From the IMG/VR virus record IMGVR_UViG_3300027985_000843, positions 1-64,000 of that record: DNA of 64,000 bases; one strand, given 5' to 3'. A program made the translations under genes and the position numbers. This document shows, one piece after another, positions 13,323 to 51,812 of this stretch (position 1 is the stretch's first letter; the number at the start of each line of letters is the position of its first letter). The notes below the pieces were generated by a model that ran no database searches, was not told the origin of the DNA, and saw only the letters and a list, made by a program, of their open reading frames with translations.

Positions 13323-13605
13323 CCAACCTTCCAAACACCTGACGAGTCCATCCGTTCACATGACCATGTGCATTTGAGATCTGCACGGCTCCGTCCTCCC
13401 GCCTACCCGTGCACAGGTGCAAGTAGTAGCTGCCCCGAACTCGGCAGAAGACGGCATCACCCACCTTCACGTCCTCGATCTTGACGGGCTCCACCGTCAC
13501 CTTCTGCCCGCTGCGGACAATCGGAGTCATCGAGTTGCCGTGAGGGCGGTAGGACACCGTCTCCCCGCGACTCAGCTGTTCTGCTATCAGTGTATTGCGT
13601 CCCAT
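13309..13605 (-). CDS. Peptidase S24/S26-like protein
   Basis: HGNSMTP...SG..V.V..P...KVGDAVF...YYLH. Confidence 0.75.
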   Translation of the reverse strand: MGRNTLIAEQLSRGETVSYRPHGNSMTPIVRSGQKVTVEPVKIEDVKVGDAVFCRVRGSYYLHLCTGRREDGAVQISNAHGHVNGWTRQVFGRLVKVE

Positions 13606-15694: not shown

Positions 15695-16082
15695 CTTCAA
15701 TGTCTACACCACCGAGCCGGCTCCAGAAGGAAGAAACTTTGGCCTTGTGCGCCTCTTCCAGCTGCTGCATCCACTCAGGCAGGTTAATCACCCCGAAAGA
15801 ACACAGGCTGCTATCCCGACTCCGAACGATTCCGAGTTGGATGCTGCCCACATCGTTTGGCGCCCACATGACCAGGACGTGCTGGCGTGGGTTGGAACGG
15901 GCGGCCGCCCGCACCCTCTCGCGGGCAATCGCGGGAGGGTCCCCCGACCCGAGCCACCCACCCCGCCGCCCTGTGTAGGATGGCAGGATCGTGCACCACT
16001 CGTCGCCCCGAGCACTCAGTCGCTCAGTGCCCGCAGGCAAGTCGTCGACGGTCCCCTCGTAGAACGACAGGCTCAGAGGCAT
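15687..16082 (-). CDS. Hypothetical protein with C-terminal SFWSRL..VD motif
   Basis: Ends SSFWSRLGGVDIEDA. Confidence 0.6.
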   Translation of the reverse strand: MPLSLSFYEGTVDDLPAGTERLSARGDEWCTILPSYTGRRGGWLGSGDPPAIARERVRAAARSNPRQHVLVMWAPNDVGSIQLGIVRSRDSSLCSFGVINLPEWMQQLEEAHKAKVSSFWSRLGGVDIEDA

Positions 16083-18414: not shown

Positions 18415-19011
18415 TCAGTCGAAGTCGAAGTCGTCTTTACCCAACCGGTTCCAAGCTGTTTTAGGTTCGGGATTGACGCTCTGGTAAGTCGGGCGAGAAG
18501 CCAGACCGTTCAATGGAACCGAACCCCTGGGAGGTATCATTACCCCTCCGATGTACAAGGTCTGACCTGTCAGATTCTGAAGGTTCAGACCGTCGAAGCT
18601 TGTGGCCGCCGTGCCGTTGGCGATAGCCATCTGGGCTTCTGATATGTGCACCACGACTGGAGTGCTGTCGTTGGAGGCGGGAGTATCGCGATAGGGGTGG
18701 GATGAAGATACGTGAAAGACAGTGTCAGGCTCAGGGTCCCTGTCGTAGATGGGGCGAGCCCCATCAGGCAGCGAAGGGATGCCACCGGGTACGGGCCTGG
18801 GCCTGGGCCTGGGCTGGGTCTGACGACTATTTTCGACCTCGACAACGTGCCTCATGTGCTGTTGGCAGGCGAAACAGAAGTCGCCTCCAAACCTTCCGGT
18901 GGCATGAAGCGCCAGCGCTTCGGTGCCGTGTGTGCTCAGCCTGCTCCGGCATATGTCGCAGACGACATAGTACCTAACCGTGCCGTCTAGTGTCGCAGTC
19001 TCGATCGCCAT
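18415..19011 (-). CDS. Zinc-binding protein with C-terminal TAWxRL motif
   Basis: CDIC..CFAC, PRPRPRP linker, ends KTAWNRLGKDDFDFD. Confidence 0.65.
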   Translation of the reverse strand: MAIETATLDGTVRYYVVCDICRSRLSTHGTEALALHATGRFGGDFCFACQQHMRHVVEVENSRQTQPRPRPRPVPGGIPSLPDGARPIYDRDPEPDTVFHVSSSHPYRDTPASNDSTPVVVHISEAQMAIANGTAATSFDGLNLQNLTGQTLYIGGVMIPPRGSVPLNGLASRPTYQSVNPEPKTAWNRLGKDDFDFD

Positions 19012-20695: not shown

Positions 20696-21154
20696 TCAAG
20701 GGGTCATATCAAAGGGGTCATTGTCCAAGAGACGGCCCCAAGCTGTGCGGTCCCCTTGGAAGTCGTACTTGGGGTTGTAGTCCGACAGGACGGCCGCGAA
20801 CTTCGTACTGTGTCCGTCTTCTGTCAGGTGAACGGTGACTTCCCACAACCCTCGGTCCTGTCGGTGGAAAAGGGACACGCCCCCTTCGCGCCTTGTGACC
20901 AACTTGACCCGCTGGTTATGGTCGAGGGCCACTGTGGATCCCACCTGGAAAGACGCGACCCTTCGATCGTCGAATGGTCGAAGCAAGTACAGTTGCCAGT
21001 CCCGGTGCATGTCCAGCTTCTCGACCAGCCCCTCTGTCTCGTCCGTCGGACGTACGAGGTCCTTCGAGTCTCGATGAAGGATGACCACCCCAAGGGCACA
21101 CCTCAGGGAGGTGCTGTCCAAGCGGACGTACGCGGGCGATAGCTCAATCAGCAT
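20696..21154 (-). CDS. Hypothetical protein with C-terminal TAWxRL motif
   Basis: Ends RTAWGRLLDNDPFDMTP. Confidence 0.65.
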   Translation of the reverse strand: MLIELSPAYVRLDSTSLRCALGVVILHRDSKDLVRPTDETEGLVEKLDMHRDWQLYLLRPFDDRRVASFQVGSTVALDHNQRVKLVTRREGGVSLFHRQDRGLWEVTVHLTEDGHSTKFAAVLSDYNPKYDFQGDRTAWGRLLDNDPFDMTP

Positions 21155-22681: not shown

Positions 22682-22978
22682 AAAGAGTTGCTTCTGGTAG
22701 GAGTGGAACACTTCGAGGACTTCCCGGGCCGATAGCGACTCGTCCACCTCGAAGCTCACCGACTTGGTTGCTACGACCACCGCGTAGCCCCTGCCGATCC
22801 ATACACCGGAAGTGACCTCCGGCCCAAGACGAACACGATGCAGCTCCTGAGCTGACAGGCCCATCCTGTACAGCTCAAGCTCGAACTTCACCCGGAACGC
22901 ATGGTGCTCCTGGATCCACTCGACGAGGGGTAGGCGATTCGAGATAGGTATTGTAGCCATTATCAATTCTTTGGTCAT
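22667..22978 (-). CDS. Hypothetical protein
   Basis: ATGA overlap with upstream ORF. Confidence 0.55.
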   Translation of the reverse strand: MTKELIMATIPISNRLPLVEWIQEHHAFRVKFELELYRMGLSAQELHRVRLGPEVTSGVWIGRGYAVVVATKSVSFEVDESLSAREVLEVFHSYQKQLFPNSS

Positions 22979-23472
22979 GGTTCATCTGGCTCCCCCTCAA
23001 TAATGTCCTCGGTTAAGCGTTCGAACGCCGTCGGGACGTGGTCGGGGATGTCGATGGGCTCCCACAGGATGTCCATCTGATCGGCGGCACACACGTACTG
23101 ACCTTCCAGGCCCGGCCGGCGAACGTTCTGGATGGTGATCTGCCCCCTGTGGGACTGCACCACCCGACCCTCTACATCTCGGTTGTCGTCTCCGACACCA
23201 ATGACCCATGAGCCTACGCTGAAAGGATCCTGTCCAGCCTCCAGAGTACCGTGAGATGCGAACCGCCTCAGGATCGGCAAAAGCTCCTGAGCATGGTCCC
23301 GCGTCAAGTGCATCCGGCCGTGCTGAATCTCCTCGCCCTCAAAGCTCACATCTACGCCAAGCCACACACAATCTTCCCCAGGAATGGAGGACTCCTGAAG
23401 ACTGCACAGGGCGCCATAGCGGTCTTGAAACTCAGCTCGCAGGAGCCCCTTCTTCGTCGGCTTGAACAACAT
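22975..23472 (-). CDS. Hypothetical phage protein with C-terminal TAFxRL motif
   Basis: F.DRYG..CSLQESS...CVWLG...RMHLTR; ends PTAFERLTEDIIEGEPDEP. Confidence 0.7.
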   Translation of the reverse strand: MLFKPTKKGLLRAEFQDRYGALCSLQESSIPGEDCVWLGVDVSFEGEEIQHGRMHLTRDHAQELLPILRRFASHGTLEAGQDPFSVGSWVIGVGDDNRDVEGRVVQSHRGQITIQNVRRPGLEGQYVCAADQMDILWEPIDIPDHVPTAFERLTEDIIEGEPDEP

Positions 23473-26185: not shown

Positions 26186-26207
26186 TACACCGGAGACCCC
26201 CGGTGTA
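26186..26207. promoter_or_regulatory. Back-to-back class II promoters
   Basis: TACACCG-N8-CGGTGTA. Confidence 0.8.
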
Positions 26208-26701
26208 TGATCGATTTCGTGCCTCTCACTTCCAATCAGATCACGGCCATCTATGCCCTAGATTGGCTGCTCGACGTGAGCGAAGACCGTCGCCGTTCGG
26301 GTCGCTCACTTGCGTGGGGCGCGGCCCTCATCAGACAAGCCCTGCGCCACCCAGGCAGACGTATCGCCTACTGTGACCACATCACCTCGATGGGCGGGGA
26401 GGAAGGGTACGAAAACCAACGCCGTATCATGTACCATGTCGTGCGCAACCTCATAGCCAGACACCCGGAACTCGACAGGCTCCAATGGGAGTTCCCCAAC
26501 ATGCGGTATTTTTGGCTGGCGTCTGATCAACTTGTGGACACCGACTGGATGCCGATGCCCCACGGCACAATGGACCCTGTCGTGTTGGGTCCCGAACCCG
26601 AGCCCCCACCTGAACCCGAGCTATCCGAACCGGCGTTCCCGGCCCCTACCTGCTGGGAGAGACTACTCGCGGAGAAAAAGGGCGACAACCCGTTCGATTG
26701 A
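26207..26701 (+). CDS. Hypothetical protein with C-terminal TCWxRL motif (likely GTG start at 26219)
   Basis: RRSGRS P-loop-like stretch, Pro-rich linker, ends PTCWERLLAEKKGDNPFD. Confidence 0.65.
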   Translation: MIDFVPLTSNQITAIYALDWLLDVSEDRRRSGRSLAWGAALIRQALRHPGRRIAYCDHITSMGGEEGYENQRRIMYHVVRNLIARHPELDRLQWEFPNMRYFWLASDQLVDTDWMPMPHGTMDPVVLGPEPEPPPEPELSEPAFPAPTCWERLLAEKKGDNPFD

Positions 26702-27516: not shown

Positions 27517-27540
27517 TACACCTGCCGGCCCGCCGGTGTA
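27517..27540. promoter_or_regulatory. Back-to-back class II promoters
   Basis: TACACCT-N10-CGGTGTA. Confidence 0.75.
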
Positions 27541-27912: not shown

Positions 27913-28442
27913 TGAAATGGCGAAAGGGCGACCTCGGACGGTTCGAATCCGAAGACAGGAACCTGCCTCGATTCGAAGTCATTCGAGCTGTGAAGGATGA
28001 GCACGTCGAGGTGTGGTACGGTGGGACCGATAAGACCACGCTCGTGCCGTGGAGCATCTTTTTCAAGGAGTGCACCAACCTGTGGAATTGGAAGCTCGAT
28101 GTGACCATCCCCCCATGGTTGGCCCCTGGTAGGGAGTTCACGGCCATGGGAAGCTTCAAGCAGGCGCTCATCAAATACAGTGTCGGACACCACATCGGGC
28201 ACAAGGTGTTCTACGGTACGTCGGAGCACGAGCACCTGTACGAGGCGGACAACGCCCGCCTCCTGGTTCGGAACATCCGGCACGACCATGCATCATGCCT
28301 CGTGCTCCCTGAGGGTCCTCTCGTGCTCGTGAGTATCGAAGATGCTGTTCGGTTTCGTCGAACCACTGCATGGTCCCGCCTGCTGGATACCAACGACATC
28401 TTCGAAGAGGAAGTTGACGATCTGGCGGAGATCTTTGGCTAG
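27912..28442 (+). CDS. Hypothetical protein with C-terminal TAWxRL motif
   Basis: Ends TTAWSRLLDTNDIFEEEVDDLAEIFG. Confidence 0.7.
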   Translation: MKWRKGDLGRFESEDRNLPRFEVIRAVKDEHVEVWYGGTDKTTLVPWSIFFKECTNLWNWKLDVTIPPWLAPGREFTAMGSFKQALIKYSVGHHIGHKVFYGTSEHEHLYEADNARLLVRNIRHDHASCLVLPEGPLVLVSIEDAVRFRRTTAWSRLLDTNDIFEEEVDDLAEIFG

Positions 28443-28633
28443 GCGTCCTTCAGTCTCTGAGCCCACGTCATGGGCTTCTTGCTCTCCTCCAGCTCAGCTT
28501 TCAACGACTGGTTTTCTTCTCGCAGGGCGCGGTTCTCCGCTTCCAAGGCGCGAACCCTGGTACGCAGGGCTTCGATCTGAGGTTGGAGATCCCTGCCGTC
28601 TTGCGGCCACAGGTCTAGGTCAACACAGGTCAT
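28439..28633 (-). CDS. Short coiled-coil protein with C-terminal TWAQRL motif
   Basis: Heptad repeats; ends KPMTWAQRLKDA. Confidence 0.65.
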   Translation of the reverse strand: MTCVDLDLWPQDGRDLQPQIEALRTRVRALEAENRALREENQSLKAELEESKKPMTWAQRLKDA

Positions 28634-28643
28634 GTTGTGAAAA

Positions 28644-28660
28644 TACACCGACTCGGTGTA
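28644..28660. promoter_or_regulatory. Back-to-back class II promoters (perfect palindrome)
   Basis: TACACCG-act-CGGTGTA. Confidence 0.8.
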
Positions 28661-28870: not shown

Positions 28871-29728
28871 TCAGCTTTTCTGGAATCGACTGTAGTTCGC
28901 TTGGATCTCGCTCGGTGTGAGGATCTTGGCGACCTCGAAGTGCATACCGTCGAGGCGGTCGTACTTCGGAGGCCACCCCCAACCTCCCCACCAGAAGCCC
29001 CAGCGAGCTGCAATGGGGACGATCTCTCGGACGCTGTTATCTGCCCCCACGAGGGCGGGACGCTGCCCGAGATAGTTGCCGTGCGTGTTGATGTCGAACG
29101 CCGTCCCCCACGCGTGGTTGCTCAGAGTCGTTCGAGACCCTCGAACGAAACGAGGAGCCCAGCTGCCACCCCACTGGTGGATGAGGACGGTTAGGTTCTC
29201 GTGTTCAATCTCCTCGAAGAGACCCAGGAGCTGGTCCTTGACCTTCGCGTTCCAGTAGATACGGCCGCTGGCCGGGAACCCGTTGATCATCGTACCTTTG
29301 AGAGTCGGAAGAACCATCTGGGTCAGGTTCTGACGCTTCCACTCAGCAGAGATGCTCACGCCCTCGGGGTTTGCCTTCGTTGGTGTCGGCGTGTGGGGGA
29401 TGTCGCCGAAAAGGGTGATACGACGCTGCCAGGTGGCCGGCTTCATGTCCGTGGGCATCGGGGGCCATGCAGGACCTTCCTTGTCGTTGTTCCCGGGCCC
29501 GACAATGACGAGGCCGTCAGCCATGGCCGAGCCCCACGTCTGGTTGCCCACGATCCCGTCCACGGGCTCCAGGTACGACTGTCTCTGGTAGGACATGGTC
29601 GCTTGGCGGGTCTTGTCTCCGAAGCTACCGTCGACGGCTCCGGCATAATAGCCAAGCCCCAGCAGGAAATTCTGCCACTTGCGTACGAGGGGGCCTCTGG
29701 ACCCCTTCATGATGGGTTCTAGTGTCAT
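28871..29728 (-). CDS. Endolysin-like protein: PG-binding domain plus M15 peptidase
   Basis: GSRGPLVRKWQ..L..LGY..VDGSFG..T..A...YQ..VDGIVG; R..SNHAWGTAFDIN...DGMHFE. Confidence 0.9.
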   Translation of the reverse strand: MTLEPIMKGSRGPLVRKWQNFLLGLGYYAGAVDGSFGDKTRQATMSYQRQSYLEPVDGIVGNQTWGSAMADGLVIVGPGNNDKEGPAWPPMPTDMKPATWQRRITLFGDIPHTPTPTKANPEGVSISAEWKRQNLTQMVLPTLKGTMINGFPASGRIYWNAKVKDQLLGLFEEIEHENLTVLIHQWGGSWAPRFVRGSRTTLSNHAWGTAFDINTHGNYLGQRPALVGADNSVREIVPIAARWGFWWGGWGWPPKYDRLDGMHFEVAKILTPSEIQANYSRFQKS

Positions 29729-29809: not shown

Positions 29810-30136
29810 ATGACAACAGACGACCACAAACCAGAAGCACCCCTGAGTAGTCCACCTGTGTCCCAGACGATTTTGAGGCTACGGCAGCAAATCGAAGAAG
29901 CTCGAACCCCAGAGGAGAAGATGGCGTTGATGCTGACCCTCGCGGCTCAGTTCGACCTTGAGCACAGCCTTCTCGACGACGGCTACAACGAGAACTACCA
30001 CAGCTACTTCGAAGAATACGAAGAAGCCCGCATGCACTTCCAGCATACGGCCCTTCGCCTCGCACGCCTGGCCCTCAGCGTGATCGATGACGAAGTGCCG
30101 AACACCTCGCCGCCTCCCCCCAAGAACGTCAACTAG
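29810..30136 (+). CDS. Hypothetical protein
   Basis: Helical acidic ORF. Confidence 0.55.
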   Translation: MTTDDHKPEAPLSSPPVSQTILRLRQQIEEARTPEEKMALMLTLAAQFDLEHSLLDDGYNENYHSYFEEYEEARMHFQHTALRLARLALSVIDDEVPNTSPPPPKNVN

Positions 30137-31020
30137 AAGTCATCGAAATCTCGACCGAGACGAGAGAAAGCCGTCGGTGCCGGCCCTCTGGGGGGCTCTG
30201 GCGGGGCCGGGCGCCTCGCAGGGGGCTCTGGCCGTCTCGGAGTCGAAGCGGGCCGTGTAGGGGGCTCTACGGCTCGAATAGGCCGAACAGCAGCGACCCT
30301 GGTCCCAGTGGCGTGGAACCTTCCGTCCTCACCCCTTTGACTGACCACGGTACCCCCGCCCCCGAAGCTCCCGCCGTATCGGCGGCCGTAATTCGGAGAG
30401 TCGTCGATGTCGATGTCCGGCATCGGCAGTTGGAATGGGCTGCCGGCACCCAGGGCTTCTTGGGCCTGCAAAGCTTCCCGGTTCATGAACAGGGACGACA
30501 GATCGGGGCTGGGAACAGAAGCAAGGTCATCAGCAAAGTTCGCATCCCCTCCAAGTTCCCAATCATCGTCGGTCGAGGTCGAGGTCGAAACCCCCGCTTG
30601 CTGCAACCGGGCGGCCCGATTCGCTATCGCAATGGCACGGGCGTCATGCTGCTCTACAATGGCAGCCGTGACCCGTTGTGTCGCCTGCGACAGAGCGTTG
30701 GCAACACTCTCGATGTTCGGTGTAAAGTCAATGTTGATGTCATCGGCGGCGAACGTAGTGAACTCCACCTCGAAGGGGACCTGCGCTTGTGATGCCTCAA
30801 CCTCGGCCAAAGGTTCGTAGGTGGGCATCTTGGGCCTGCCAAAGGTGGACGCGAATTGGGAGGACTGGACAGCCCTCATTTCCCTCACTGCGCCCGCAGA
30901 CAAGAGCATCTCCGGAGTGAGATCAGGGAGGACAGCTTCTCTGGCAGCACTGCCGTTCCGCTGACGCTCTGCCTCGACAAGTTCTTGGAGTCGTTTTTCG
31001 AGTTCGGAAGCCATGGTCAC
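30133..31020 (-). CDS. Low-complexity protein with C-terminal TAFxRL motif
   Basis: Pro/Arg-rich linker, ends PTAFSRLGRDFDDF. Confidence 0.7.
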   Translation of the reverse strand: MTMASELEKRLQELVEAERQRNGSAAREAVLPDLTPEMLLSAGAVREMRAVQSSQFASTFGRPKMPTYEPLAEVEASQAQVPFEVEFTTFAADDINIDFTPNIESVANALSQATQRVTAAIVEQHDARAIAIANRAARLQQAGVSTSTSTDDDWELGGDANFADDLASVPSPDLSSLFMNREALQAQEALGAGSPFQLPMPDIDIDDSPNYGRRYGGSFGGGGTVVSQRGEDGRFHATGTRVAAVRPIRAVEPPTRPASTPRRPEPPARRPAPPEPPRGPAPTAFSRLGRDFDDF

Positions 31021-31049: not shown

Positions 31050-31493
31050 ATGGGTTACCTGATAGACGATCAGTCAGTACCTCCCGTGAGAGATCGGAAA
31101 TGGCGGATATGGTCCGCCCCGGTGTACCGGTTTCTGAGCAAACCCAGATCCTGGTCTGAACTCAAGCAGTGGTCACGACAGATGAAGGTCATGAGCATCC
31201 CACGGATGACTCAGTGCCTGGCTTGGCTGGACCACATGAAGGTGGCCTACACGACCGGCCACGAGGTGAGGGACATTCGGTGGGTGTCAGTCGTCACGGA
31301 CATGTTTGACAGTGTTCCGGACGTCCTCTCCCACGAAAAAGCCGAGGATGATGGTGAAGGCGCCGGTGGTGAGAGCGACGCCCAAGGGCCCCTTGATGAA
31401 GAGGTAGATGGTGGCGGAGAAGAAGAGGACGAGCAGGATGACGGTGATGATCTTGGCGACGACTTTCACGATCTGCTCTCCAGGAACCGTTGA
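31050..31493 (+). CDS. Hypothetical protein (3' part overlaps an opposite-strand ORF)
   Basis: Plausible N-terminal domain; acidic tail is antisense to 31287-31469. Confidence 0.4.
   Translation: MGYLIDDQSVPPVRDRKWRIWSAPVYRFLSKPRSWSELKQWSRQMKVMSIPRMTQCLAWLDHMKVAYTTGHEVRDIRWVSVVTDMFDSVPDVLSHEKAEDDGEGAGGESDAQGPLDEEVDGGGEEEDEQDDGDDLGDDFHDLLSRNR
31287..31469 (-). CDS. Small 2-TM membrane protein (holin-like topology)
   Basis: Two hydrophobic helices, charged C-terminus, GTGA overlap with the 2H gene. Confidence 0.6.
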   Translation of the reverse strand: MKVVAKIITVILLVLFFSATIYLFIKGPLGVALTTGAFTIILGFFVGEDVRNTVKHVRDD

Positions 31494-32014
31494 ACCACTC
31501 GGGCAGCCTTCGTTGTCAGCACGAACGGGAAGGACACCACGAGCTTGTCATCCCCTGAGTTGCCTCCCCACAGCACCAGCTCGTGGGCGCCCCACTCGAC
31601 AGTGGGAATGCTCCGGTCCGAGAAATCCTCACCGCTGTCATCGTAGGCCAACGTCACGTGCGGCTTGAACTCGGGGTGGCGCTGGCTGTATTCGACGCCC
31701 TCTTCGTCGAACACCTTGCGGATGCGTTCCCGCAGAGCATGCAGCTCATCGGATTCCACCCGGCAGATGATGGGCTTGTTGCCGTCACTGGGGAAGCTCG
31801 TAACCAACGAGGTACCCACGGTGAATGGCTTCGTCTGTGAGGTCACTCCGAACGCCACCCGAATAATCTCGGCCAACTCGTTGATGTCCAAGTCGTCGCC
31901 GAAGAAAAACAGGGTCACATGGAAGTGTGACGTGGGCTCTCTGTCACCCGGTACATCGATCCCGCCGAGCAGACGGGCCGTTTCGTGCGGCACAGCCAAA
32001 CCAAGAAATGCCAT
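31466..32014 (-). CDS. 2H phosphoesterase (ThpR/Acb1-like) with C-terminal RVVQRFL motif
   Basis: Two HxT motifs, FHVTL and FKPHVTLAY. Confidence 0.88.
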   Translation of the reverse strand: MAFLGLAVPHETARLLGGIDVPGDREPTSHFHVTLFFFGDDLDINELAEIIRVAFGVTSQTKPFTVGTSLVTSFPSDGNKPIICRVESDELHALRERIRKVFDEEGVEYSQRHPEFKPHVTLAYDDSGEDFSDRSIPTVEWGAHELVLWGGNSGDDKLVVSFPFVLTTKAARVVQRFLESRS

Positions 32015-33490: not shown

Positions 33491-34174
33491 TTAGCTCTTT
33501 AGAATGGCGTGAATTCGTCGGAAGCGGCTGCGAGAGACGTTCCGGAGCTTCGTAAGGTCCAAGGGCCGAACTGGTTGGTCAAGCCACTCCTGAACTGTGT
33601 TCGGAGCCTTCACCCTCCCGAGATGCAGGTAGTGCGGCTTGGCCGGGAGAAGCTCCCGCACGAGGGCCTTGTTGTGGGTCACCACGAAGATGCCCATCGT
33701 CTTCTTGGGCGGATCGAGAGCGAAGTCTCGAATGTACTGGCCCATCCCAGCTGCCCAGCTGTCGGACAGCCCAAGGTCGGGCTCATCCCAGAAAATGGCG
33801 TGCTTGTGCTCACGTCCCCGACACGTGCGAACCCCTGCTATCACCGTGACGGTGGAGTTCTCCCCCGTCGCCTGCCATTGCTCGTTGCCGTAGACCATGC
33901 TCCGCAGCGCGTTGTACCCGTCAACCCGGCCTTGCATGCTCGGGTCCATGCATTCGATCTTGCTGTTCCTGTATGCCTGGCCGACGATCCGACGAAAGAA
34001 AGACTTGCCCCCAGCGTTGTCACCAACCACGATCACGAGCTTGCCCTTGCCAGGGGTCCAGACAGCTGGAATGGCCGGGAGGCCGCCGTCCTCCGGGTTG
34101 AAGTATTCGAGACCGTCCAGCAGATCTTCTACGAGAGCCTGGGGGCTGGAACAATCGAATTTGATGTTCGACAT
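33491..34174 (-). CDS. ABC-type ATPase
   Basis: Walker A GDNAGGKS, ATGE signature-like, Walker B/D-loop WDEPDLGLS, H-loop VVTHN. Confidence 0.85.
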   Translation of the reverse strand: MSNIKFDCSSPQALVEDLLDGLEYFNPEDGGLPAIPAVWTPGKGKLVIVVGDNAGGKSFFRRIVGQAYRNSKIECMDPSMQGRVDGYNALRSMVYGNEQWQATGENSTVTVIAGVRTCRGREHKHAIFWDEPDLGLSDSWAAGMGQYIRDFALDPPKKTMGIFVVTHNKALVRELLPAKPHYLHLGRVKAPNTVQEWLDQPVRPLDLTKLRNVSRSRFRRIHAILKS

Positions 34175-34184
34175 GCTCTAGAAC

Positions 34185-34210
34185 TACACCGGGGAGGCCG
34201 CTTCGGTGTA
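34185..34210. promoter_or_regulatory. Back-to-back class II promoters
   Basis: TACACCG-N12-CGGTGTA, each exactly 10 nt from an ATG (34174, 34221). Confidence 0.85.
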
Positions 34211-34220
34211 GAGTTTTCGC

Positions 34221-35021
34221 ATGACTCCGGAGACTGCTGCTCTAGCGACCCTTGCCGTCATCATAGGCCCTGCGCTGCTCCTGCCCGCCTATCGTATGAT
34301 CAAGCGTCGACAAAAGGCACGTCGGGCAGCTCAGAAGGTCGAACCCCCGAAAGAGGTTCCCAAGAAATCACCCGAGGTGTCGCTTGAGCCTATCGGGGGT
34401 ATCTACTACACCCGCCAGCAGATTTCTTTGGCCCACAGGGTCGTACCCTCGGCATGCATCGTCGGGATCGAAGGGCTGTCCCTTTATCTATCGGAGGGCC
34501 CTGGAACTATGGAAGTCACCCCCACAGACATCAATCTTCTCCGAACGGCCGTGTCGAACGGGTGGCTCACCAAGATCGACTCGGATTTGCCTCCACAACA
34601 AGTACCTGGAATTCGAGCCAGGCTGTCTGAAATAGGCGAAACCTTCCGACGTCGAATTGACGCCTTCCAGCGTCAATTCGATAGCGGATTGGATGCATTG
34701 CGTCGGGCTGAATCTCTGTCGGACGTGGAGCACATTGTCTACACTCCTGGAGAGGCACGCATCTACCGGGCAACCCGGGACTTCGCGCTTCGATCCGTGG
34801 AAGGCGCTACAGTGCACATTCAGAAGGGCGAGCTTCTCCGGTTCGACGGTATGACGGTCACCACTCAACACCATCAGCAAGACGCTCCGGGCCTTCGAGG
34901 GGCCGTACGCAATGGGTGGATCCGGCTTGAACCCGAAGCTGTGTCGATTCGTCAGCCGGCTCAGCCATCTCGAACAGCGACCCAGCGACTCCTCGATGAC
35001 GACGTGTGGGAGGATGCATGA
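34221..35021 (+). CDS. N-terminal TM protein with C-terminal TATxRL motif
   Basis: TM, duplicated LRxAVxNGW[LI] module, ends RTATQRLLDDDVWEDA. Confidence 0.7.
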   Translation: MTPETAALATLAVIIGPALLLPAYRMIKRRQKARRAAQKVEPPKEVPKKSPEVSLEPIGGIYYTRQQISLAHRVVPSACIVGIEGLSLYLSEGPGTMEVTPTDINLLRTAVSNGWLTKIDSDLPPQQVPGIRARLSEIGETFRRRIDAFQRQFDSGLDALRRAESLSDVEHIVYTPGEARIYRATRDFALRSVEGATVHIQKGELLRFDGMTVTTQHHQQDAPGLRGAVRNGWIRLEPEAVSIRQPAQPSRTATQRLLDDDVWEDA

Positions 35022-35371
35022 GCGACCTGATTTTTGGCTTCTTGATCGCAGTCATGGGCTTCCTATTCCTCGCAGCCGTGGTCAGGTGCGTTCTGCTGAC
35101 CCGGCAAAACCTGCTACAAGCGCAGCAGATGGATAAGCTTCGGGATGAAAACCAGCGGCTTCAAGAGTCAGCTGAGCAGCTACGAGACTCAAACGATCGG
35201 CTGAGGAGTCGCATGTTCGATCTTCGCCGCCGAAGTCGTGATCTGGCAACCAAACCGTGTACAGGGGGCGACGCGATGAAGTATCCGTCCGTCGAGACGG
35301 TCCAGCTGAAGCCGAAGCCCATCAAAACAGCCACTGCCCGCCTCCTAGATGGTGATGTGTGGGCGAAATGA
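35018..35371 (+). CDS. TM plus coiled-coil protein with C-terminal TATxRL motif
   Basis: Ends KTATARLLDGDVWAK. Confidence 0.7.
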   Translation: MSDLIFGFLIAVMGFLFLAAVVRCVLLTRQNLLQAQQMDKLRDENQRLQESAEQLRDSNDRLRSRMFDLRRRSRDLATKPCTGGDAMKYPSVETVQLKPKPIKTATARLLDGDVWAK

Positions 35372-35826
35372 ACCCTGATATCCTCGTGGATGCCCTGGCT
35401 GTGTTCGTCCTTTTGGCGGCCTTTGCCGTAGTGAAGTGGTCTCGCAAGTGGCTCAATCAAATCACCAGCCTTAATAACCAAGTCGGCGGTCTTGAGAGCC
35501 AGATTAGGATCCTCAAGGAAACGGTCCGCAGCAGGGAACAAGATCTCAACATCCTCAAAGAGGTCTCTGAGCATCGATGCTCCGAGTTCGAAGCCCGGCG
35601 GGCCGATCAAGCAGTGGAAAACGATCGACTGCGAAGGTACATTGCGTCTTTGCAGCGAGAAATTCAATCATTAAAGCGAGTCGACCAACACCAGATGAAT
35701 GTGCGGCACGACGCAAACGTGCCTCGCGAACCCCAACCACCCTCCGAACCACCACCGTCAGTCTTTCAACGTCTCGAACGCGATGATATATGGGACGCTG
35801 GCCCATGGGACACCGATCCGTCATGA
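35368..35826 (+). CDS. TM plus coiled-coil protein with C-terminal SVFxRL motif
   Basis: Ends PPSVFQRLERDDIWDAGPWDTDPS. Confidence 0.7.
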   Translation: MNPDILVDALAVFVLLAAFAVVKWSRKWLNQITSLNNQVGGLESQIRILKETVRSREQDLNILKEVSEHRCSEFEARRADQAVENDRLRRYIASLQREIQSLKRVDQHQMNVRHDANVPREPQPPSEPPPSVFQRLERDDIWDAGPWDTDPS

Positions 35827-37514
35827 AAAAGCGTATTCTTGCTGCCGTAGCAGTCTTTGCTTCTATCTCAGCTGCTGTCGTCTATGCACCCGACGCCGTT
35901 CGCTGGTACATCGAGGACACCTATCCCGACGTCGACCTTCATGGGGACGTTCACCTCGTGTGGGGCGGCGTGGAACTGACCAATGTCGCGGTCCATCGGC
36001 CGGGGCTCGACGCCACGCTGGACCGCGTGCACGTCAGTGCCGAGAAACGGGTCACTGTGCGTGGTGGAAGGGTCGCCCTGAACCTGGACACCCTTGAGGG
36101 CGGAGAAGGCCAGGAAGGGGTACCAGGGGGCGGGCATGAGGGCGTTTCAATCACCGCCTCCGAACTCAATGTCGAAGCGAAGCGAGGGGACATCCACGCC
36201 CGGCTCACAGACGTCGACGTGAATCCCTCTCGCGTGTGCTTTCGCGTCGGTGCTGTGTTCCGAGGCGACCTTCTTGCGAACGTGTGGCAAGGGTGCATGC
36301 CTCGGGACAGGTCGAAGCTGACAGCATGGCGGGTAGAAGTCCCGGTGAAGCTGCCCTTTGATGTTCCCCGAGTCGACACTCAACAGGTCGTTCGCGTGTC
36401 GAATGCGGAAGTCGTCTTGGCGGACAAGCTCGTGAGGTTCGCTTCCGCCTCCATGGGGCCATTCACAGTGATCGGGCCCGCCACGGTCAAGCTGTCGGAC
36501 GACACCGTGTTCTTCGATGCCCCACAGATTTCTGTCGATCACCCGTGGGTGTCCCCCACCCTCGCCACGTTCGACCACGCGTCTCTCACAGCACCCCTCA
36601 GCCTGTTCCAAACGGGGAAGGGGGCCTTCCGAGTTCGGATTGGGAACGCCACCATCCATCTCGACCCGGAGACTCATTCCGTGCGAGGCGACGAGGCTTG
36701 CGGAGATTGGCTGGACATCCTACCGCACCCCCTGCCCGAGGCCATGGACGACATGCAAGAGCACTTCCACGGCCGTCTGAGGTTCGAGGTGGGGGCCAAG
36801 CCCACGCCCTACCTCAACATCAAGCACAACTGCACTTACGATTGCAGTGCCCAGCCGATTGCGGACATTCGAAAAGGGTCCACAAGCTACATGGCCTACG
36901 GCTCGGACGGATCGCTCTTTGAGCGGCGTGTCGGGCGAAACACCCCAGGATGGGTTCGGATAGCGGACCTACCCCCTCATGTGCCCCGCGCGTTCATTCT
37001 GCTGGAGGACCCCGGGTTCCAAAGCCATCACGGGATTCACGTCATGGCCCTCCAGAACAGCCTGATCGCTAACCTTGAGAAGGGCGAGTTCGTAAAGGGC
37101 GGGTCCACCATCTCGATGCAGCTCTCGAAGAACCTGTGGCTTCGCCGGCACAAGACCGTCGGCCGCAAGGCTCATGAAGCCCTGCTCACAGTCGCTCTGG
37201 AATCGTGTCTCAGCAAGGCAGACATCCTGGAGTGGTACGTCAACGTGGTCGAATACGGTCCGGACCTGTACGGGCTAGGGCCCGCCGCGAAGCATTACTT
37301 CGACAAGTCTGCGCAGAACCTCGAACCCGACGAGGCATTCTACCTCGCCAGTCTTCTGCCCCGGCCTTCTCGGGCAGTCCCTCCGAAGCAAGGTGGGCTC
37401 GCCCGAGCCCACCGCCTCATGAGGATGCTCGCTCGCAGTGGCTTCATTTCTGAACATCTCATCCCAATTGAGCCCGGCGAAGTCAACGCTACTGGCTGGG
37501 AGGTGAATGAGTAA
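35823..37514 (+). CDS. Peptidoglycan transglycosylase (GT51, monofunctional/MtgA-like)
   Basis: EDPGFQSHHG, GGSTISMQLSKNL, RKAHE, KADILEWYVN, LASLLP motifs; N-terminal signal anchor. Confidence 0.9.
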   Translation: MKKRILAAVAVFASISAAVVYAPDAVRWYIEDTYPDVDLHGDVHLVWGGVELTNVAVHRPGLDATLDRVHVSAEKRVTVRGGRVALNLDTLEGGEGQEGVPGGGHEGVSITASELNVEAKRGDIHARLTDVDVNPSRVCFRVGAVFRGDLLANVWQGCMPRDRSKLTAWRVEVPVKLPFDVPRVDTQQVVRVSNAEVVLADKLVRFASASMGPFTVIGPATVKLSDDTVFFDAPQISVDHPWVSPTLATFDHASLTAPLSLFQTGKGAFRVRIGNATIHLDPETHSVRGDEACGDWLDILPHPLPEAMDDMQEHFHGRLRFEVGAKPTPYLNIKHNCTYDCSAQPIADIRKGSTSYMAYGSDGSLFERRVGRNTPGWVRIADLPPHVPRAFILLEDPGFQSHHGIHVMALQNSLIANLEKGEFVKGGSTISMQLSKNLWLRRHKTVGRKAHEALLTVALESCLSKADILEWYVNVVEYGPDLYGLGPAAKHYFDKSAQNLEPDEAFYLASLLPRPSRAVPPKQGGLARAHRLMRMLARSGFISEHLIPIEPGEVNATGWEVNE

Positions 37515-37878
37515 CTGGATAGATCTCACCGGTCAGAGATTCGGGCACCTTCGAGTGATCCGGCACCTAGACCAAAGGAACGGCCAGACCCTGTGGGTTT
37601 GCTGCTGTGACTGCGGAAGGATTGTGCACCGAGCCTCTCACAGTTTGCAGATAGGCAACGAGAACACGGCCTGCGAACACTGCCATCGGTCAGAGGGTCG
37701 CCTCGTCGGATGGCAGCTCCTGTACCGAAAGCAGAAAGGGCAGACAATACAGGCTCTAGAGGTGCAAGCTTTCCTGGAAGCCCTCGAAAACGAGAGCTTC
37801 GACAATGAGCAGGTCGACCCTTCTTGGACAGAACAGCCGGATCTGATCTTTCAGATGATCTGGGAAATGGACGACTAG
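37507..37878 (+). CDS. HNH-associated N-terminal domain protein (no nuclease domain seen)
   Basis: IDLTGQRFGHLRVI...WVCCCDCG. Confidence 0.65.
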   Translation: MSNWIDLTGQRFGHLRVIRHLDQRNGQTLWVCCCDCGRIVHRASHSLQIGNENTACEHCHRSEGRLVGWQLLYRKQKGQTIQALEVQAFLEALENESFDNEQVDPSWTEQPDLIFQMIWEMDD

Positions 37879-38291: not shown

Positions 38292-39143
38292 ATGATTGAT
38301 GTCGTACAACTAGTCAGGGATGGGCACGGGTACTTCGAGTGGGTTGAGGTGGTGAGCGAGTACCAGGGCTATCAGCTGCACATCAGCGTCATGCGGGACG
38401 CGTTGAAGTTCGACACCATACCTGCCCTGAATTACAAAAGGGTTCCTATTTCAGGGGACTCTCGCGTGTTCAATGGCGTGCGCCTCCCAGCCACGGCTCA
38501 CGAGATGCAACAGATCGCCGACCTCCTCGGGTGCCTGCTGATGACCCCCAAGGTCATCGACCTCGTGTGGCTCAATGCGGGCCTGCGGTTCGACTCTATC
38601 GTCAACGTGAAGGGGCAGATCGTCGCCACCAGCAACATCCACGACGTGCACGAGGCCATCGAAGCCGCCATTGCCAAGATGGGCGGGGACGACGGCACCA
38701 AGCTCGTGTCATGCGTCGGCAAATACTGGTGCCTCATGGAGCTGCTGGCCCTCAAGGGCATGGTTCAGGGGGACTACGCCGCGTGCAACTACGGGTGGTT
38801 CGCCGTGAAGGCGAGCGGGCCCGGCCTCACCCCAGGGACCCAGTGCTGGCAGAGACCAGGCTACGCCCACAACAAGCAACACGTCGACCCTTCCCAGACG
38901 ATCCGGCTCATGAGCCGGTACGCCGTGCTGACCCACCCCGACGGGTCAGAGGAGAATGTCGACCTGCTGGACATCCTCCAGAGCGACCAGCTCTGTCCGC
39001 TGCTCACCCACGATGGCAAGCCCATGACCTATCTGCGTCAAGCGGGAGTCCCCGAGGAATCGCCCATCGAATACAGTGCCCCCATCGTGTTGCCCGAGAT
39101 TGTGGTCAACGGCTACCGACAGGCAAAGCTCCCCTACGTCTAA
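38292..39143 (+). CDS. Hypothetical protein
   Basis: 283-aa ORF; QQIAD.LGCLL.TPKV.D...GKYW...NYGW...H...HVD.SQ. Confidence 0.7.
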   Translation: MIDVVQLVRDGHGYFEWVEVVSEYQGYQLHISVMRDALKFDTIPALNYKRVPISGDSRVFNGVRLPATAHEMQQIADLLGCLLMTPKVIDLVWLNAGLRFDSIVNVKGQIVATSNIHDVHEAIEAAIAKMGGDDGTKLVSCVGKYWCLMELLALKGMVQGDYAACNYGWFAVKASGPGLTPGTQCWQRPGYAHNKQHVDPSQTIRLMSRYAVLTHPDGSEENVDLLDILQSDQLCPLLTHDGKPMTYLRQAGVPEESPIEYSAPIVLPEIVVNGYRQAKLPYV

Positions 39144-39786: not shown

Positions 39787-40923
39787 ATGGTGACACCTAG
39801 CGATATCGGCTGGGGCAAGTACAGCCAGTATGAAGGCCCCTACTTCAGAGGTACCCGCAAGTTCCAGCTCCCGGCCAAGCCCTCCGAGGAGCACAGACTG
39901 CTGGCGGTCATCACGAGCACCGAAGGCGGCTCCTTCGACGCCATCAACATGTACGATCGATGCATCTTGAGCACCGGCTTGCTTCAGTGGTGCGAGGCGA
40001 AATACTTCCTCACGTCGAACCTGCTCGGCGCCATTGCGGCCGCAGACCCCTCCCTTCTTCAGCCATTGCAGGCAGCCCTCCAGGCCGCCGATGCCCAGTT
40101 CGTCGAGAAGAGCCCAGGCAAGTGGCGGTTCTTCTGGCGGGAACCCCGCAATGAGGTCGACGATGCGGTAGAGCAGGCGAAGCTTTTCCTTCTCGACTCG
40201 TCCGGCCACCAAGGGAGCTGGAACGAGACGTCGAAGCACTACGCCAACCTGTGGGCCGCCAAAATTGCCAGCGTGCTCGCCCAGGATGCCGCGATCGAGA
40301 TCCAGACTCAGTACACGGCCAACCGAGTCAAGATGTTCGCCACCCCGGCCGCCTCCAGAATCCTCTTCGATGGTACCCCGTCCACGGGCTGGACGGGGGC
40401 CACACGGGCCATCTACCTGTCCTTTGCTGCCAACCTCCCTGCCGCCGCCTCGACGCAATTGCAGGCCGCTGTAGCCGAGACAGGAGCCGCCAAGTGGAGC
40501 AAGGAGTGGTGCATCCACATCTCCCGCCGCCTGACCTTCGGCCCGAACATCTCCATCTACCCTCACCGGTACAACGCCATCCGGCCCGTCGTCGAGAAGC
40601 TCTACGGCGTCGATCTGCCGGACATGGCCGGGGAGCTTCAGGTGTGGAAGGGCGAGCAGGGACTCGGGGACGTGTCCGACGAAGATATCCTGAGCGAGGA
40701 ACTGCACGAGCCGACCTTCACGACCGTCAAGGAGGTCCAGCGGCTCCTCGTCGACATGGGCTACGACCTCGGGCCCGCCGGGGCCGACGGGGTCATGGGT
40801 CGCAAGACGAAGGAAGCCCTCCTGGTCTTTCAGGGGAACGCAGGGCTGAAGGCTGACGGATTGATTGGGCCCAAGACGCGGGCCGCGATGGTCACGGCGT
40901 GGCGGGACAAGGTGTGCGCCTAG
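39787..40923 (+). CDS. Lysozyme-like domain plus C-terminal PG-binding domain (endolysin-like)
   Basis: TEGGSFDAINMYD...GLLQW; VKEVQRLL..GY...ADGVMG..T..A...FQ...LKADGLIGPKT. Confidence 0.8.
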   Translation: MVTPSDIGWGKYSQYEGPYFRGTRKFQLPAKPSEEHRLLAVITSTEGGSFDAINMYDRCILSTGLLQWCEAKYFLTSNLLGAIAAADPSLLQPLQAALQAADAQFVEKSPGKWRFFWREPRNEVDDAVEQAKLFLLDSSGHQGSWNETSKHYANLWAAKIASVLAQDAAIEIQTQYTANRVKMFATPAASRILFDGTPSTGWTGATRAIYLSFAANLPAAASTQLQAAVAETGAAKWSKEWCIHISRRLTFGPNISIYPHRYNAIRPVVEKLYGVDLPDMAGELQVWKGEQGLGDVSDEDILSEELHEPTFTTVKEVQRLLVDMGYDLGPAGADGVMGRKTKEALLVFQGNAGLKADGLIGPKTRAAMVTAWRDKVCA

Positions 40924-51434: not shown

Positions 51435-51812
51435 ATGGCGTGGATTGATACACTCAAGGTTGGGGACAAGGTGATCGTTGACCATGGCGGGTGGCCTAGC
51501 ACTTCACACCTGCGCACGGTTACGCGTCTGACGAAGACGCAGATCATCTTGAACAACGACGCGAAGTACAACCGAAAAACCGGTCATAAGGTCGGGACGG
51601 GGATCTACTACTCCTCATCCCTCCGGGAAGCCACGCCGGAAGCCCTCAAGGAAATGCAGCAGCTCAGGGCTCTCACGAAGGCCAAGCGAGAGCTTTGGGA
51701 CTTCGCGGAGAAGATCAACAGGATGTCAGTGCATGAGATCCATCGAGACGAGGCCCTGTCGAGCAAGCTGCAACAGATCACCGACAGCATCAGGGAAGGA
51801 TCGGAATCATGA
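51435..51812 (+). CDS. Hypothetical early protein
   Basis: LKVGDKV...VTRLTKTQI. Confidence 0.7.
   Translation: MAWIDTLKVGDKVIVDHGGWPSTSHLRTVTRLTKTQIILNNDAKYNRKTGHKVGTGIYYSSSLREATPEALKEMQQLRALTKAKRELWDFAEKINRMSVHEIHRDEALSSKLQQITDSIREGSES

What the first reader, a model, noticed from the sequence alone, without database searches (positions are those of the whole stretch)
34221..37514. Three TM-anchored, tag-bearing proteins translationally coupled to a peptidoglycan polymerase
Seen: one class II operon with ATGA overlaps. It holds three proteins with an N-terminal TM and a C-terminal RL(L/E)xxD[VI]W tail (two with coiled coils), followed by an intact GT51 transglycosylase. An ABC ATPase is transcribed divergently. 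A cell-wall building enzyme is unusual cargo for a phage. Inference: a membrane complex that tethers the tag-binding hub to the envelope and remodels or reinforces the wall (superinfection exclusion, lysis delay or division control).
Basis: partly seen in the sequence, partly recalled or inferred. Interest (0 to 1): 0.66.

Follow-up and report, generated by a model that had tools for sequence, protein, structure and literature searches.

The report
Phage wall polymerase with tagged membrane adaptors
An uncultivated giant phage carries an intact cell-wall glycan polymerase fused to a lipid-groove domain, always preceded by one to three fast-evolving membrane proteins whose cytoplasmic ends carry a docking peptide shared with about ten other phage proteins; the arrangement is conserved in related giant phages, absent next to the bacterial versions of the enzyme, and its binding partner is still unknown.

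Summary
Genes at 34221-35021, 35018-35371, 35368-35826 and 35823-37514 form a + strand chain joined by ATGA overlaps. The first three (here gA, gB, gC) have an N-terminal membrane helix and a C-terminal RL..D.W tail. The fourth is an intact family-51 peptidoglycan glycosyltransferase (GT51). A P-loop ATPase lies 46 bp upstream on the other strand.

New here:
- The record is a 372-kb IMG/VR giant phage.
- The GT51 protein is a membrane helix, then an AsmA/TamB/Lpt-like open beta-groove domain, then GT51. Bacteria (Myxococcota, Bacteroidota) have the same architecture. The phage copies form one clade.
- A membrane-helix-plus-tag gene sits directly upstream of GT51 in 12 of 32 related phage loci and 3 of 3 contigs found from the adaptor side. 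It is upstream of 0 of 68 bacterial loci.
- Charge bias puts the adaptors' tails in the cytoplasm and GT51 in the periplasm.
- The tag (roughly P-x-T-A-aromatic-x-R-L-x-x-D-D) ends about 13 proteins of this phage, 10 of them soluble.

Best reading: membrane adaptors that couple an unidentified cytoplasmic tag receptor to a periplasmic wall polymerase. Neither the complex nor the receptor is shown; one structure-based binding test gave no verdict.

The parts
33491..34174 (-). 227-aa P-loop ATPase of the ABC/AAA_21 type, transcribed divergently from the operon
   Evidence: Walker A, Walker B/D-loop and H-loop are invariant in 6 orthologues. There are 314+ homologues at 46-59% identity on giant-phage contigs, some carrying PF13304. 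No Pfam ABC_tran match. It lies next to the adaptors in L002, L003 and L009, nearby in L132 and L034, and is absent from that position in L133.
34184..34211 (.). Palindrome (8-bp arms, 12-nt spacer) in the middle of the 46-bp divergent intergenic region
   Evidence: Folds at -17.8 kcal/mol, z -2.4. The same TACACCGG...CCGGTGTA element sits in two other divergent intergenic regions of the window (26186, 27517).
34221..35021 (+). gA, a 266-aa adaptor. Membrane helix at residues 6-24 (34236-34292), seven K/R just after it, two small beta domains flanking a helical stretch, Pro-rich linker, tag at 34974-35009
   Evidence: AF2 model has pLDDT 56, so only the membrane helix and the first beta domain are usable; there is a weak SH3-like match, Z 5.0. 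Orthologous to the single adaptors of L002, L132 and L133.
35018..35371 (+). gB, a 117-aa adaptor. Membrane helix at residues 4-22, heptad region 39-66, linker, tag at 35327-35362
   Evidence: Only sub-threshold DivIC and Rz-like matches.
35368..35826 (+). gC, a 152-aa adaptor. Membrane helix at residues 5-22, heptad region 34-61, Pro-rich linker, tag at 35758-35793 followed by 10 more residues
   Evidence: No significant similarity to gB.
35823..37514 (+). 563-aa monofunctional peptidoglycan glycosyltransferase. N-in membrane helix (35835-35891), open beta-groove domain (about 35931-36935), GT51 domain (36936-37442). Catalytic Glu codons at 37005-37007 and 37176-37178
   Evidence: Pfam and NCBIfam. 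AF2 pLDDT 90. Foldseek and VIA matches. Invariant residues. Alignment to 2oqo.
37507..37878 (+). 123-aa HNH-endonuclease-like ORF overlapping the GT51 stop; probably a mobile insertion
   Evidence: PHROG 374, E 1.2e-13. No counterpart at this position in any related locus.
38292..39143 (+). 283-aa conserved neighbour of unknown function
   Evidence: Found downstream of GT51 in L002, L132, L133, L010 and L009. It belongs to a viral hypothetical-protein family.
39787..40923 (+). 378-aa protein with a C-terminal PG_binding_1 domain; probable wall hydrolase
   Evidence: Pfam E 8.5e-13. Conserved within a few kb of GT51 in 7 loci at 49-65% identity, plus a 74-residue match in an eighth (L034). The N-terminal part gives only a weak lead to a GH46/lysozyme-like fold.
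28871..29728 (-). PG_binding_1 + M15 peptidase; endolysin-like conserved neighbour
   Evidence: Present near GT51 in 7 related loci.
30133..31020 (-). 295-aa soluble protein ending in the same tag after a Pro-rich linker
18415..19011 (-). 198-aa soluble Cys-rich protein ending in the tag. It stands for the other tagged soluble proteins at 15687-16082(-), 20696-21142(-), 22975-23472(-), 26207-26701(+) and 28439-28648(-)

Best explanation
This is a conserved two-compartment module of a clade of uncultivated giant phages.

The enzyme. It is a type II membrane protein. Its periplasmic part is an open beta-groove domain of the kind that carries lipid tails (AsmA/TamB/Lpt-like), followed by a catalytically intact GT51 domain. 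It should polymerise lipid II into glycan strands. The record encodes no transpeptidase, so cross-linking would depend on host enzymes.

The adaptors. The one to three genes translated just before it encode single-pass proteins of the opposite orientation. They have a few residues outside and a helix in the membrane. Inside the cell they carry a spacer (small beta domains or a coiled coil), a proline-rich linker and a short C-terminal docking peptide.

The tag. The same peptide ends about ten soluble proteins of the phage, so it most likely binds one common cytoplasmic receptor, phage- or host-encoded.

Proposed mechanism. The adaptors sit beside the polymerase through helix-helix contacts in the membrane. 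They recruit that receptor to the site of wall synthesis, or place the polymerase where the receptor is. This lets the phage keep or redirect glycan synthesis in the infected cell during a long infection.

Shown: gene order, overlaps, domain content, catalytic residues, conservation, phage-specificity of the adaptors, spread of the tag.
Inferred: topology (charge bias), adaptor-polymerase contact, existence of a single receptor, physiological role.
For: - Overlapping starts and stops.
- GT51 is intact. The fold matches MtgA (Z 19.9) and the Aquifex glycosyltransferase domain (Z 19.0).
- N-terminal domain matches LptD N-terminus (Z 8.8), TamB (8.6), LPD-3 (8.6), Vps13 (8.1) and LptC (6.5-6.7). 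Foldseek gives LPD-3 at 7e-6. Bacterial homologues with the same layout hit DUF748 below its cut-off (E 1.9e-12 and 6.7e-6; 46.5 and 24.9 bits against 50).
- Phage GT51s form one clade, SH-aLRT 99.
- Adaptor directly upstream of GT51 in 12 of 32 phage loci (10 of 12 with GT51 identity of 37% or more), with gaps of 3-68 nt.
- A profile of gA-type adaptors found only 21 proteins among 1.84 billion. All 3 adaptor contigs with DNA continue into GT51.
- 0 of 68 bacterial loci have such a gene.
- Charge flanks: adaptors have 0 K/R before and 2-7 after the helix; GT51 has 3 before.
- Tag: 13 aligned tails with varying synonymous codons. 12 tail hits against 0.77 expected, with a pattern chosen after seeing the data. 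Ten tagged proteins have no hydrophobic segment, so the receptor must be cytoplasmic. Tags also occur on membrane and soluble proteins of relatives.
- No transpeptidase, SEDS or L,D-transpeptidase in the record.
Against: - No interaction is demonstrated. The complex prediction (GT51 + ATPase + gB) scored 0.00, which the tool says is no evidence either way.
- The receptor is unidentified.
- More distant phage relatives keep GT51 without an upstream adaptor (20 of 32 loci), so the enzyme does not strictly need one.
- Topology rests on the positive-inside rule only, and the bias for gB is modest.
- The neighbourhood also holds probable wall hydrolases and a holin-like gene, which fits a lysis-related role as well.
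- The beta-groove assignment rests on borderline Z values (8-9).
- The adaptor genes have weaker codon bias (GC3 0.58-0.64) than their neighbours (0.73-0.84).
- The record is 78% complete, so a missing partner gene proves nothing.
Confidence: 0.42

Rival explanations
1. Lysis-timing module. The single-pass proteins act as holin/antiholin-like or spanin-like lysis factors. The GT51 either protects the wall until the right time, or drains lipid II into uncross-linked strands to weaken it. The tag is then a regulatory tail.
For: - Conserved neighbours are wall-directed: the PG_binding_1 protein at 39787-40923 and the M15 peptidase with PG_binding_1 at 28871-29728.
- A 60-aa ORF with a long hydrophobic N-terminal stretch (read by eye as two membrane helices) and a charged tail lies at 31287-31469(-).
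- Weak PHROG matches of gB and gC to Rz-like spanins, E about 1e-3.
- Holins typically have charged cytoplasmic C-termini (established knowledge).
- The phage has no transpeptidase, so its strands may stay uncross-linked.
Against: - Spanin i-subunits are N-in with periplasmic coiled coils; the charge bias here is the reverse.
- No lipoprotein partner gene was seen in the ORF list.
- The same tag ends ten soluble, non-lysis-like proteins.
- The adaptors are 117-320 aa with folded cytoplasmic domains, larger than usual holins.
- A separate holin-like gene already exists.
Confidence: 0.15
2. Co-expressed but functionally independent. The adaptors are early membrane proteins (host takeover or exclusion) that merely share a transcription unit with GT51. 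The tag is a degron or localisation signal common to a class of early proteins, with no link to wall synthesis.
For: - 12 of the 13 tagged genes lie in the first 83 kb among small genes of unknown function.
- 20 of 32 GT51 loci lack an upstream adaptor.
- The adaptors evolve very fast, as conflict proteins do.
- No support from the complex prediction (not evidence against binding).
Against: - All three membrane-anchored tagged proteins of the 372-kb record are next to GT51 and none is elsewhere.
- Adjacency with tight spacing survives in 15 loci despite sequence turnover and changes in copy number.
- In L009 four membrane-plus-tag genes lie within about 3 kb of GT51.
Confidence: 0.2
3. Divisome mimic. 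gB and gC are FtsB/FtsL/DivIC-like proteins with periplasmic coiled coils. They regulate the polymerase from the outside, as FtsQLB regulates FtsWI.
For: - Pfam DivIC match of gB, E 4.5e-4 and 20.4 bits, below the 28.9-bit cut-off.
- Membrane helix plus heptad region.
- Adjacency to a wall synthase.
Against: - The match is below threshold and is explained by a membrane helix plus coiled-coil composition.
- The charge bias predicts the coiled coil in the cytoplasm.
- The tag that follows it is shared with proteins lacking any export signal.
- Orthologous positions in relatives are filled by non-coiled-coil adaptors.
Confidence: 0.05

Closest known systems
Monofunctional GT51 glycosyltransferases (E. 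coli MtgA, S. aureus MGT/SgtB; GT domain of class A PBPs)
   Same: Same catalytic domain, motifs, two catalytic glutamates and N-terminal membrane anchor. Z 19-20 to solved structures.
   Different: About 335 extra residues of beta-groove domain lie between anchor and GT51. The gene is encoded by a phage and preceded by tagged adaptors.
Bacterial DUF748/AsmA-like + GT51 proteins (Myxococcota, about 790-815 aa; Bacteroidota, about 650 aa); uncharacterised as far as the literature searches show
   Same: Same order of membrane helix, beta-rich domain and GT51. Best cellular matches reach 40-51% identity in the GT51 part.
   Different: The phage versions are shorter (about 550-570 aa) and form their own clade. 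Only they have the upstream adaptors: 0 of 68 bacterial loci.
ZipA and EzrA (bacterial N-out/C-in bitopic tethers that link cytoplasmic FtsZ to the membrane; EzrA also connects to PBP1)
   Same: Same predicted orientation. Cytoplasmic spacer (Pro-rich linker or coiled coil) ending in a partner-binding element. Functional proximity to wall synthesis. This comparison rests on established knowledge, not on a test here.
   Different: No sequence or fold relation was found. The binding element here is a roughly 12-residue peptide, not a domain, and the partner is unknown.
Phage phi29 p16.7 (membrane helix + coiled coil that organises phage replication at the membrane)
   Same: A small phage protein with an N-terminal anchor and a cytoplasmic coiled coil that brings a cytoplasmic process to the membrane (from memory).
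   Different: p16.7 ends in a DNA-binding domain and has no link to a wall enzyme or to a shared tag.
C-terminal peptide hubs: SSB C-terminal tail, sliding-clamp binding motifs, T4 gp45 clients
   Same: One short C-terminal acidic/hydrophobic peptide after a flexible linker, carried by many unrelated proteins.
   Different: The consensus (aromatic-x-R-L-x-x-D-D) matches none of these motifs, and some carriers are membrane-anchored. A separate protein at 13605-14102(-) does end in an SSB-like ..DDIPF.
Rz-type i-spanins
   Same: N-terminal membrane helix plus coiled coil in a phage gene near wall hydrolases; weak PHROG matches.
   Different: Opposite predicted topology, no o-spanin partner, and the tag is shared with cytoplasmic proteins.

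Membership tests
GT51 peptidoglycan glycosyltransferase | Significant match to the family profile | tested here: met
   PF00912 E 1.4e-45, 155 bits against a cut-off of 27. TIGR02070/TIGR02074 domain-level matches.
GT51 peptidoglycan glycosyltransferase | Two catalytic glutamates (motif 1 E-D-x-x-F-x-x-H-x-G; motif 3 R-K-x-x-E) and motif 2 G-G-S-T-I | tested here: met
   E395, D396, H402, G404, G426-T429, R448, K449 and E452 are invariant in 39 sequences. They are aligned to the same motifs of 2oqo.
GT51 peptidoglycan glycosyltransferase | Lysozyme-like GT51 fold | tested here: met
   Model pLDDT 90. 3vmq Z 19.9 (rmsd 3.4, 208 residues aligned); 2oqo Z 19.0.
GT51 peptidoglycan glycosyltransferase | Lipid II polymerisation, moenomycin-sensitive | not testable with these tools
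   Needs a biochemical assay.
AsmA/TamB-like (or Lpt-like) open beta-groove lipid-handling domain | Elongated open beta-sheet groove after an inner-membrane anchor | tested here: inconclusive
   LptD N-terminus Z 8.8, TamB 8.6, LPD-3 8.6, Vps13 8.1. Foldseek gives LPD-3 at 7e-6. The values are near the tool's noise level of 7-8 but point consistently to one class. Bacterial homologues hit DUF748 below its cut-off; the window protein has only a weak LmeA match.
AsmA/TamB-like (or Lpt-like) open beta-groove lipid-handling domain | Hydrophobic groove lining and lipid binding | not tested
   Model coordinates could not be inspected with the tools at hand.
ABC-type ATPase | Walker A, Walker B with D-loop, H-loop | tested here: met
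   Invariant G51..G56-K57-S58, D130-E131-P132..G135-L136-S137 and T166-H167.
ABC-type ATPase | LSGGQ signature and a match to an ABC profile | tested here: not met
   Only a degenerate T-G-x-x-S is found at the expected place. No ABC_tran match at E<0.01. Weak SufC match, E 0.003. Some homologues carry AAA_21, PF13304.
Rz-like i-spanin | N-in/C-out topology with periplasmic coiled coil, and a paired o-spanin lipoprotein gene | tested here: not met
   Charge bias is the reverse. No candidate partner ORF in the list. PHROG matches only at E about 1e-3.
FtsB/DivIC/FtsL | Profile match above cut-off and a periplasmic coiled coil | tested here: not met
   20.4 bits against a 28.9-bit cut-off. Predicted cytoplasmic coiled coil.
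Holin | Small membrane protein with a charged cytoplasmic C-terminus that permeabilises the membrane | tested here: inconclusive
   One membrane helix and an acidic C-terminus are present, but there are large cytoplasmic domains and no holin family match. Function is not testable here.

The most novel reading that the evidence does not exclude
A giant-phage clade runs a private peptide-docking network. More than ten unrelated phage proteins end in one short motif that plugs into a single, still unknown cytoplasmic receptor. Candidates are the highly conserved AAA_21-type ATPase next door, the R2K ATP-grasp ligase at 11773-12648, or a host machine. The membrane-anchored members of the network wire that receptor across the inner membrane to a virus-encoded wall polymerase, whose lipid-groove domain may hold the undecaprenyl carrier. 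That would be a viral trans-envelope device for controlling host cell-wall growth from inside the cell.
Probability: 0.2. Interest if true: 0.85.

Novelty: new variant of a known kind. Interest (0 to 1): 0.62.

Why it matters
Phages are known to destroy the cell wall or to block its precursors, not to build it. An intact glycan polymerase kept for a long time by a whole clade of giant phages would mean that some viruses take over wall synthesis during infection. So would the virus-specific membrane adaptors in front of it.

The shared C-terminal tag gives a concrete experimental handle. A roughly 12-residue peptide could be used to fish out a central receptor of an otherwise unannotated phage group; about nine in ten proteins scanned here match no family.

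The beta-groove plus GT51 architecture is also present, and apparently unstudied, in Myxococcota and Bacteroidota. A phage-derived lead could therefore open a question in bacterial envelope biology.

Tried and rejected
- Complex prediction with GT51 (39-row alignment) + ATPase (6 rows) + gB as partner scored 0.00 and the controls were not run. The tool calls this no verdict, so it is used neither for nor against binding.
- blastn of the operon against GenBank phages found nothing.
- Single-protein scans of IMG/VR with GT51 or gA found nothing. The alignment-based scan worked.
- The word search with gA found only itself.
- tblastn of gA, gB and gC against related loci gave nothing for gB or gC, and for gA only two short weak matches (E about 1e-5, L045 and L046).
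- Pfam, PHROG and NCBIfam give the adaptors only sub-threshold coiled-coil-type matches (DivIC, End3, Rz-like). These were rejected as membership because of topology and score.
- The AF2 model of gA is poor (pLDDT 56). The SH3-like match (Z 5.0) is only a lead.
- No hub candidate came from annotation. The large neighbouring proteins (858, 735, 727, 807 and 434 aa) have no Pfam or PHROG match, and there is no tubulin in the record.
- Host from the GT51 tree: the phage clade is not nested in any phylum (deep branch support 49). The best identities are to Myxococcota, so the host is left open.
- Precedent in cultivated phages: most GenBank 'phage' hits are bacterial contigs. Microcystis phage MaAM05 'mtgA' lies between glyS, gatD and engB and is doubtful as a true phage gene.
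- Literature searches found no description of a phage GT51, of this tag, or of a DUF748-GT51 fusion.
- DNA-level explanation of the tag (a promoter or RNA element at gene ends) is rejected because Arg and Leu codons vary freely.
It was rerun by reference.


Full report
**What the window is.** The window is the first 64 kb of a 371,739-bp linear IMG/VR virus record, which CheckV estimates as 78% complete. GC is about 59% throughout. The viral call rests on four things: the IMG/VR classification; a borderline HK97-type capsid match at 198670-199197; endolysin-like and HNH genes; and the fact that the relatives lie on 200-550-kb viral contigs. Terminase, sheath and portal profiles did not match. 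Very few genes match any family.

**Checking the observation.**
- The ORF list shows 34221-35021 (266 aa, gA), 35018-35371 (117 aa from the ATG, gB), 35368-35826 (152 aa, gC) and 35823-37514 (563 aa from the ATG).
- Direct reading confirms ATGA at 35018, 35368 and 35823. It also shows an ATGAGTAA overlap with a fifth gene, an HNH-like ORF, at 37507.
- Each of gA, gB and gC has one strongly hydrophobic stretch at the N-terminus and the stated tail.
- A simple heptad test supports coiled coils in gB and gC.
- The ATPase start is 46 bp from the gA start on the other strand.
- A strict form of the tail pattern occurs in only four of 2,745 ORFs of the record, and three of them are these neighbours.

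**The enzyme.**
- The C-terminal 190 residues are an unambiguous GT51 domain. All five motifs and both catalytic glutamates are invariant across 39 homologues. They align residue for residue with the Aquifex PBP1a glycosyltransferase domain.
- The AF2 model is confident (pLDDT 90). It shows a helix at 2-33, a long all-beta region to about residue 371, then GT51.
- The GT51 part matches S. aureus MtgA and the Aquifex domain at Z 19-20. The beta region matches the LptD N-terminal jellyroll, TamB, LPD-3, Vps13 and LptC at Z 6.5-8.8. These scores are individually borderline, but all are open beta-groove lipid carriers.
- Bacterial proteins with the same layout exist in Myxococcota (about 800 aa) and Bacteroidota (about 650 aa). 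Two of the three scanned hit DUF748, an AsmA-like family, below its cut-off.
- The record has no transpeptidase, SEDS polymerase or L,D-transpeptidase.

**Relatives and phylogeny.**
- More than a hundred full-length homologues (30-60% identity) exist, many on contigs of 200-460 kb. A further 46 loci were recovered from IMG/VR.
- In a maximum-likelihood tree of the GT51 region, all phage copies form one clade (SH-aLRT 99). The clade includes a 4-kb contig binned as Parcubacteria.
- Its sister group is unresolved (support 49), so the tree does not name a host. The highest identities are to Polyangiales-type Myxococcota.

**Synteny.**
- In the closer relatives, a gene encoding an N-terminal membrane helix and the tag ends 3-68 nt before GT51. 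There is one copy in L002, L005, L006, L007, L017, L132 and L133, two in L009 and L019, and three in L003 and the window.
- With uniform criteria this holds for 12 of 32 phage loci: 10 of 12 with GT51 identity of 37% or more, and 2 of 20 below that. It holds for 0 of 68 bacterial loci.
- The reverse test agrees. A profile of four gA-type adaptors found only 21 proteins among 1.84 billion representatives. The three adaptor contigs for which DNA was available all run into the GT51 gene 9-10 nt downstream or overlapping it.
- The adaptors themselves are almost unalignable. gB against gC gives E 0.14, and gA against its L002 counterpart gives E 0.003.
- Other conserved neighbours are a 2H phosphoesterase with Acb1-like matches, a 418-aa protein, the ATPase (six loci), a 283-aa viral protein, the PG_binding_1 protein (seven loci, plus a short match in an eighth) and an M15 peptidase with PG_binding_1 (seven loci).

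**Topology.**
- The adaptors have no K/R before the helix and 2-7 just after it. GT51 has three before it. The relatives show the same bias.
- By the positive-inside rule the adaptors are N-out/C-in and the enzyme is N-in/C-out. This is inference, but a second argument backs it: ten proteins carrying the same tag have no hydrophobic segment at all. The element that reads the tag must therefore be cytoplasmic.

**The tag.**
- Aligning 13 tails of the record gives roughly P-x-T-A-(W/F/Y)-x-R-L-(L/G)-x-D-D, followed by a few acidic and hydrophobic residues. It usually comes after a proline-rich linker.
- Codons for the invariant Arg and Leu vary, so selection acts on the protein.
- A pattern fitted after the fact occurs 12 times in the last 22 residues of 428 predicted genes against 0.77 expected from internal positions.
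- Twelve of the 13 genes lie in the first 83 kb.
- In relatives the adaptor tails read ...R-Y-D-R-L-x-(D/E)-D-D.... Further membrane and soluble proteins carry it too.
- The motif does not fit the clamp-binding, SSB-tail or FtsZ C-terminal peptides as I recall them.

**The adaptors' cytoplasmic parts.**
- gA and its orthologues contain one or two copies of a roughly 60-residue beta domain ending in L-R-G-A-(V/I)-x-x-G-W-(L/I), plus a helical Met/Arg-rich stretch.
- The domain also starts some 360-390-aa soluble proteins of unknown function.
- The gA model is poor, and the SH3-like match is weak.

**The ATPase.** It is far better conserved (46-59% identity over 314+ homologues) than the adaptors. 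Its nucleotide-binding motifs are intact, and it is best described as AAA_21/ABC-like. Its position next to the adaptors makes it a candidate receptor, but nothing tested here supports that.

**Reading.**
- I favour a trans-membrane coupling module (confidence 0.42). It consists of an active periplasmic glycan polymerase, membrane adaptors beside it, and a shared cytoplasmic receptor recruited through the tag.
- The lysis-timing rival (0.15) draws on the hydrolase-rich neighbourhood.
- The 'independent neighbours' rival (0.20) draws on GT51 loci without adaptors.
- The FtsB/L-like rival (0.05) conflicts with topology.
The idea of a tether is reasonable and is now backed by synteny and phage-specificity. 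The hub, the complex and the physiological role remain open.

Noticed in passing
window 13605-14102 (-): 165-aa protein with no family match ends in ..E-D-I-D-D-I-P-F. That is the signature of bacterial SSB C-terminal tails, so it may be a phage SSB or a decoy for the host SSB interactome.
   Followed up: partly
window 11773-12648 (+); also the end of L003, 13548-13653: R2K-clade ATP-grasp enzyme (Pfam R2K_2 4.7e-39, R2K_3 1.1e-31). This family has been predicted to ligate peptide tags onto proteins in phage-host conflicts (PMC4431377). It is a speculative candidate for an enzyme acting on the acidic tails.
   Followed up: partly
window 26186-26207, 27517-27540, 34184-34211: The same palindrome (TACACCGG...CCGGTGTA, variable spacer) sits in three very short divergent intergenic regions, between or overlapping the two start codons. 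It is probably a regulatory hairpin or operator of this phage. Two more copies lie at 285085 and 287442 of the record.
   Followed up: partly
window 37507-37878 (+): HNH-endonuclease-like ORF overlaps the GT51 stop codon and is absent from this position in all related loci, so it looks like a recent mobile insertion.
   Followed up: partly
window 31287-31469 (-) and 28871-29728 (-): A 60-aa ORF with a long hydrophobic N-terminal stretch (read by eye as two membrane helices) and a charged tail is holin-like. An M15 peptidase with PG_binding_1 lies nearby. Together they are probably the real lysis genes, a few kb from the GT51 operon.
   Followed up: partly
window 31466-32014 (-): 2H phosphoesterase (2',5' RNA ligase family) that also matches the anti-CBASS Acb1 profile (1.5e-6). 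It is conserved near GT51 in eleven related loci.
   Followed up: partly
window 34221-35826: The three adaptor genes have third-position GC of 0.58-0.64, against 0.73-0.84 in neighbouring genes. This is consistent with fast turnover or weaker codon selection.
   Followed up: no
L054 (JBAZMT010000082.1, 4-kb contig binned as Parcubacteria): Its GT51 falls inside the phage clade in the tree, so the contig is probably giant-phage DNA mis-binned into a bacterial MAG.
   Followed up: no
L134 (Microcystis phage MaAM05, MW495066.1 113467-123949): The annotated 'mtgA' of this 274-kb phage record lies between glyS, gatD and engB. That stretch looks cellular, so it is either host-derived cargo or an assembly or contamination issue.
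   Followed up: partly
P0254, P0257, P0260 (363-392 aa, metagenomic): The small beta domain of gA-type adaptors, with its L-R-G-A-I-x-x-G-W-L end, also forms the N-terminus of a family of soluble proteins that have no Pfam or PHROG match.
   Followed up: partly
window 59028-60011 (+), 51809-52774 (+): D12-class N6-adenine DNA methyltransferase (1.4e-62) and a DUF932 protein (4e-53). These are among the few annotatable genes of the window.
   Followed up: no
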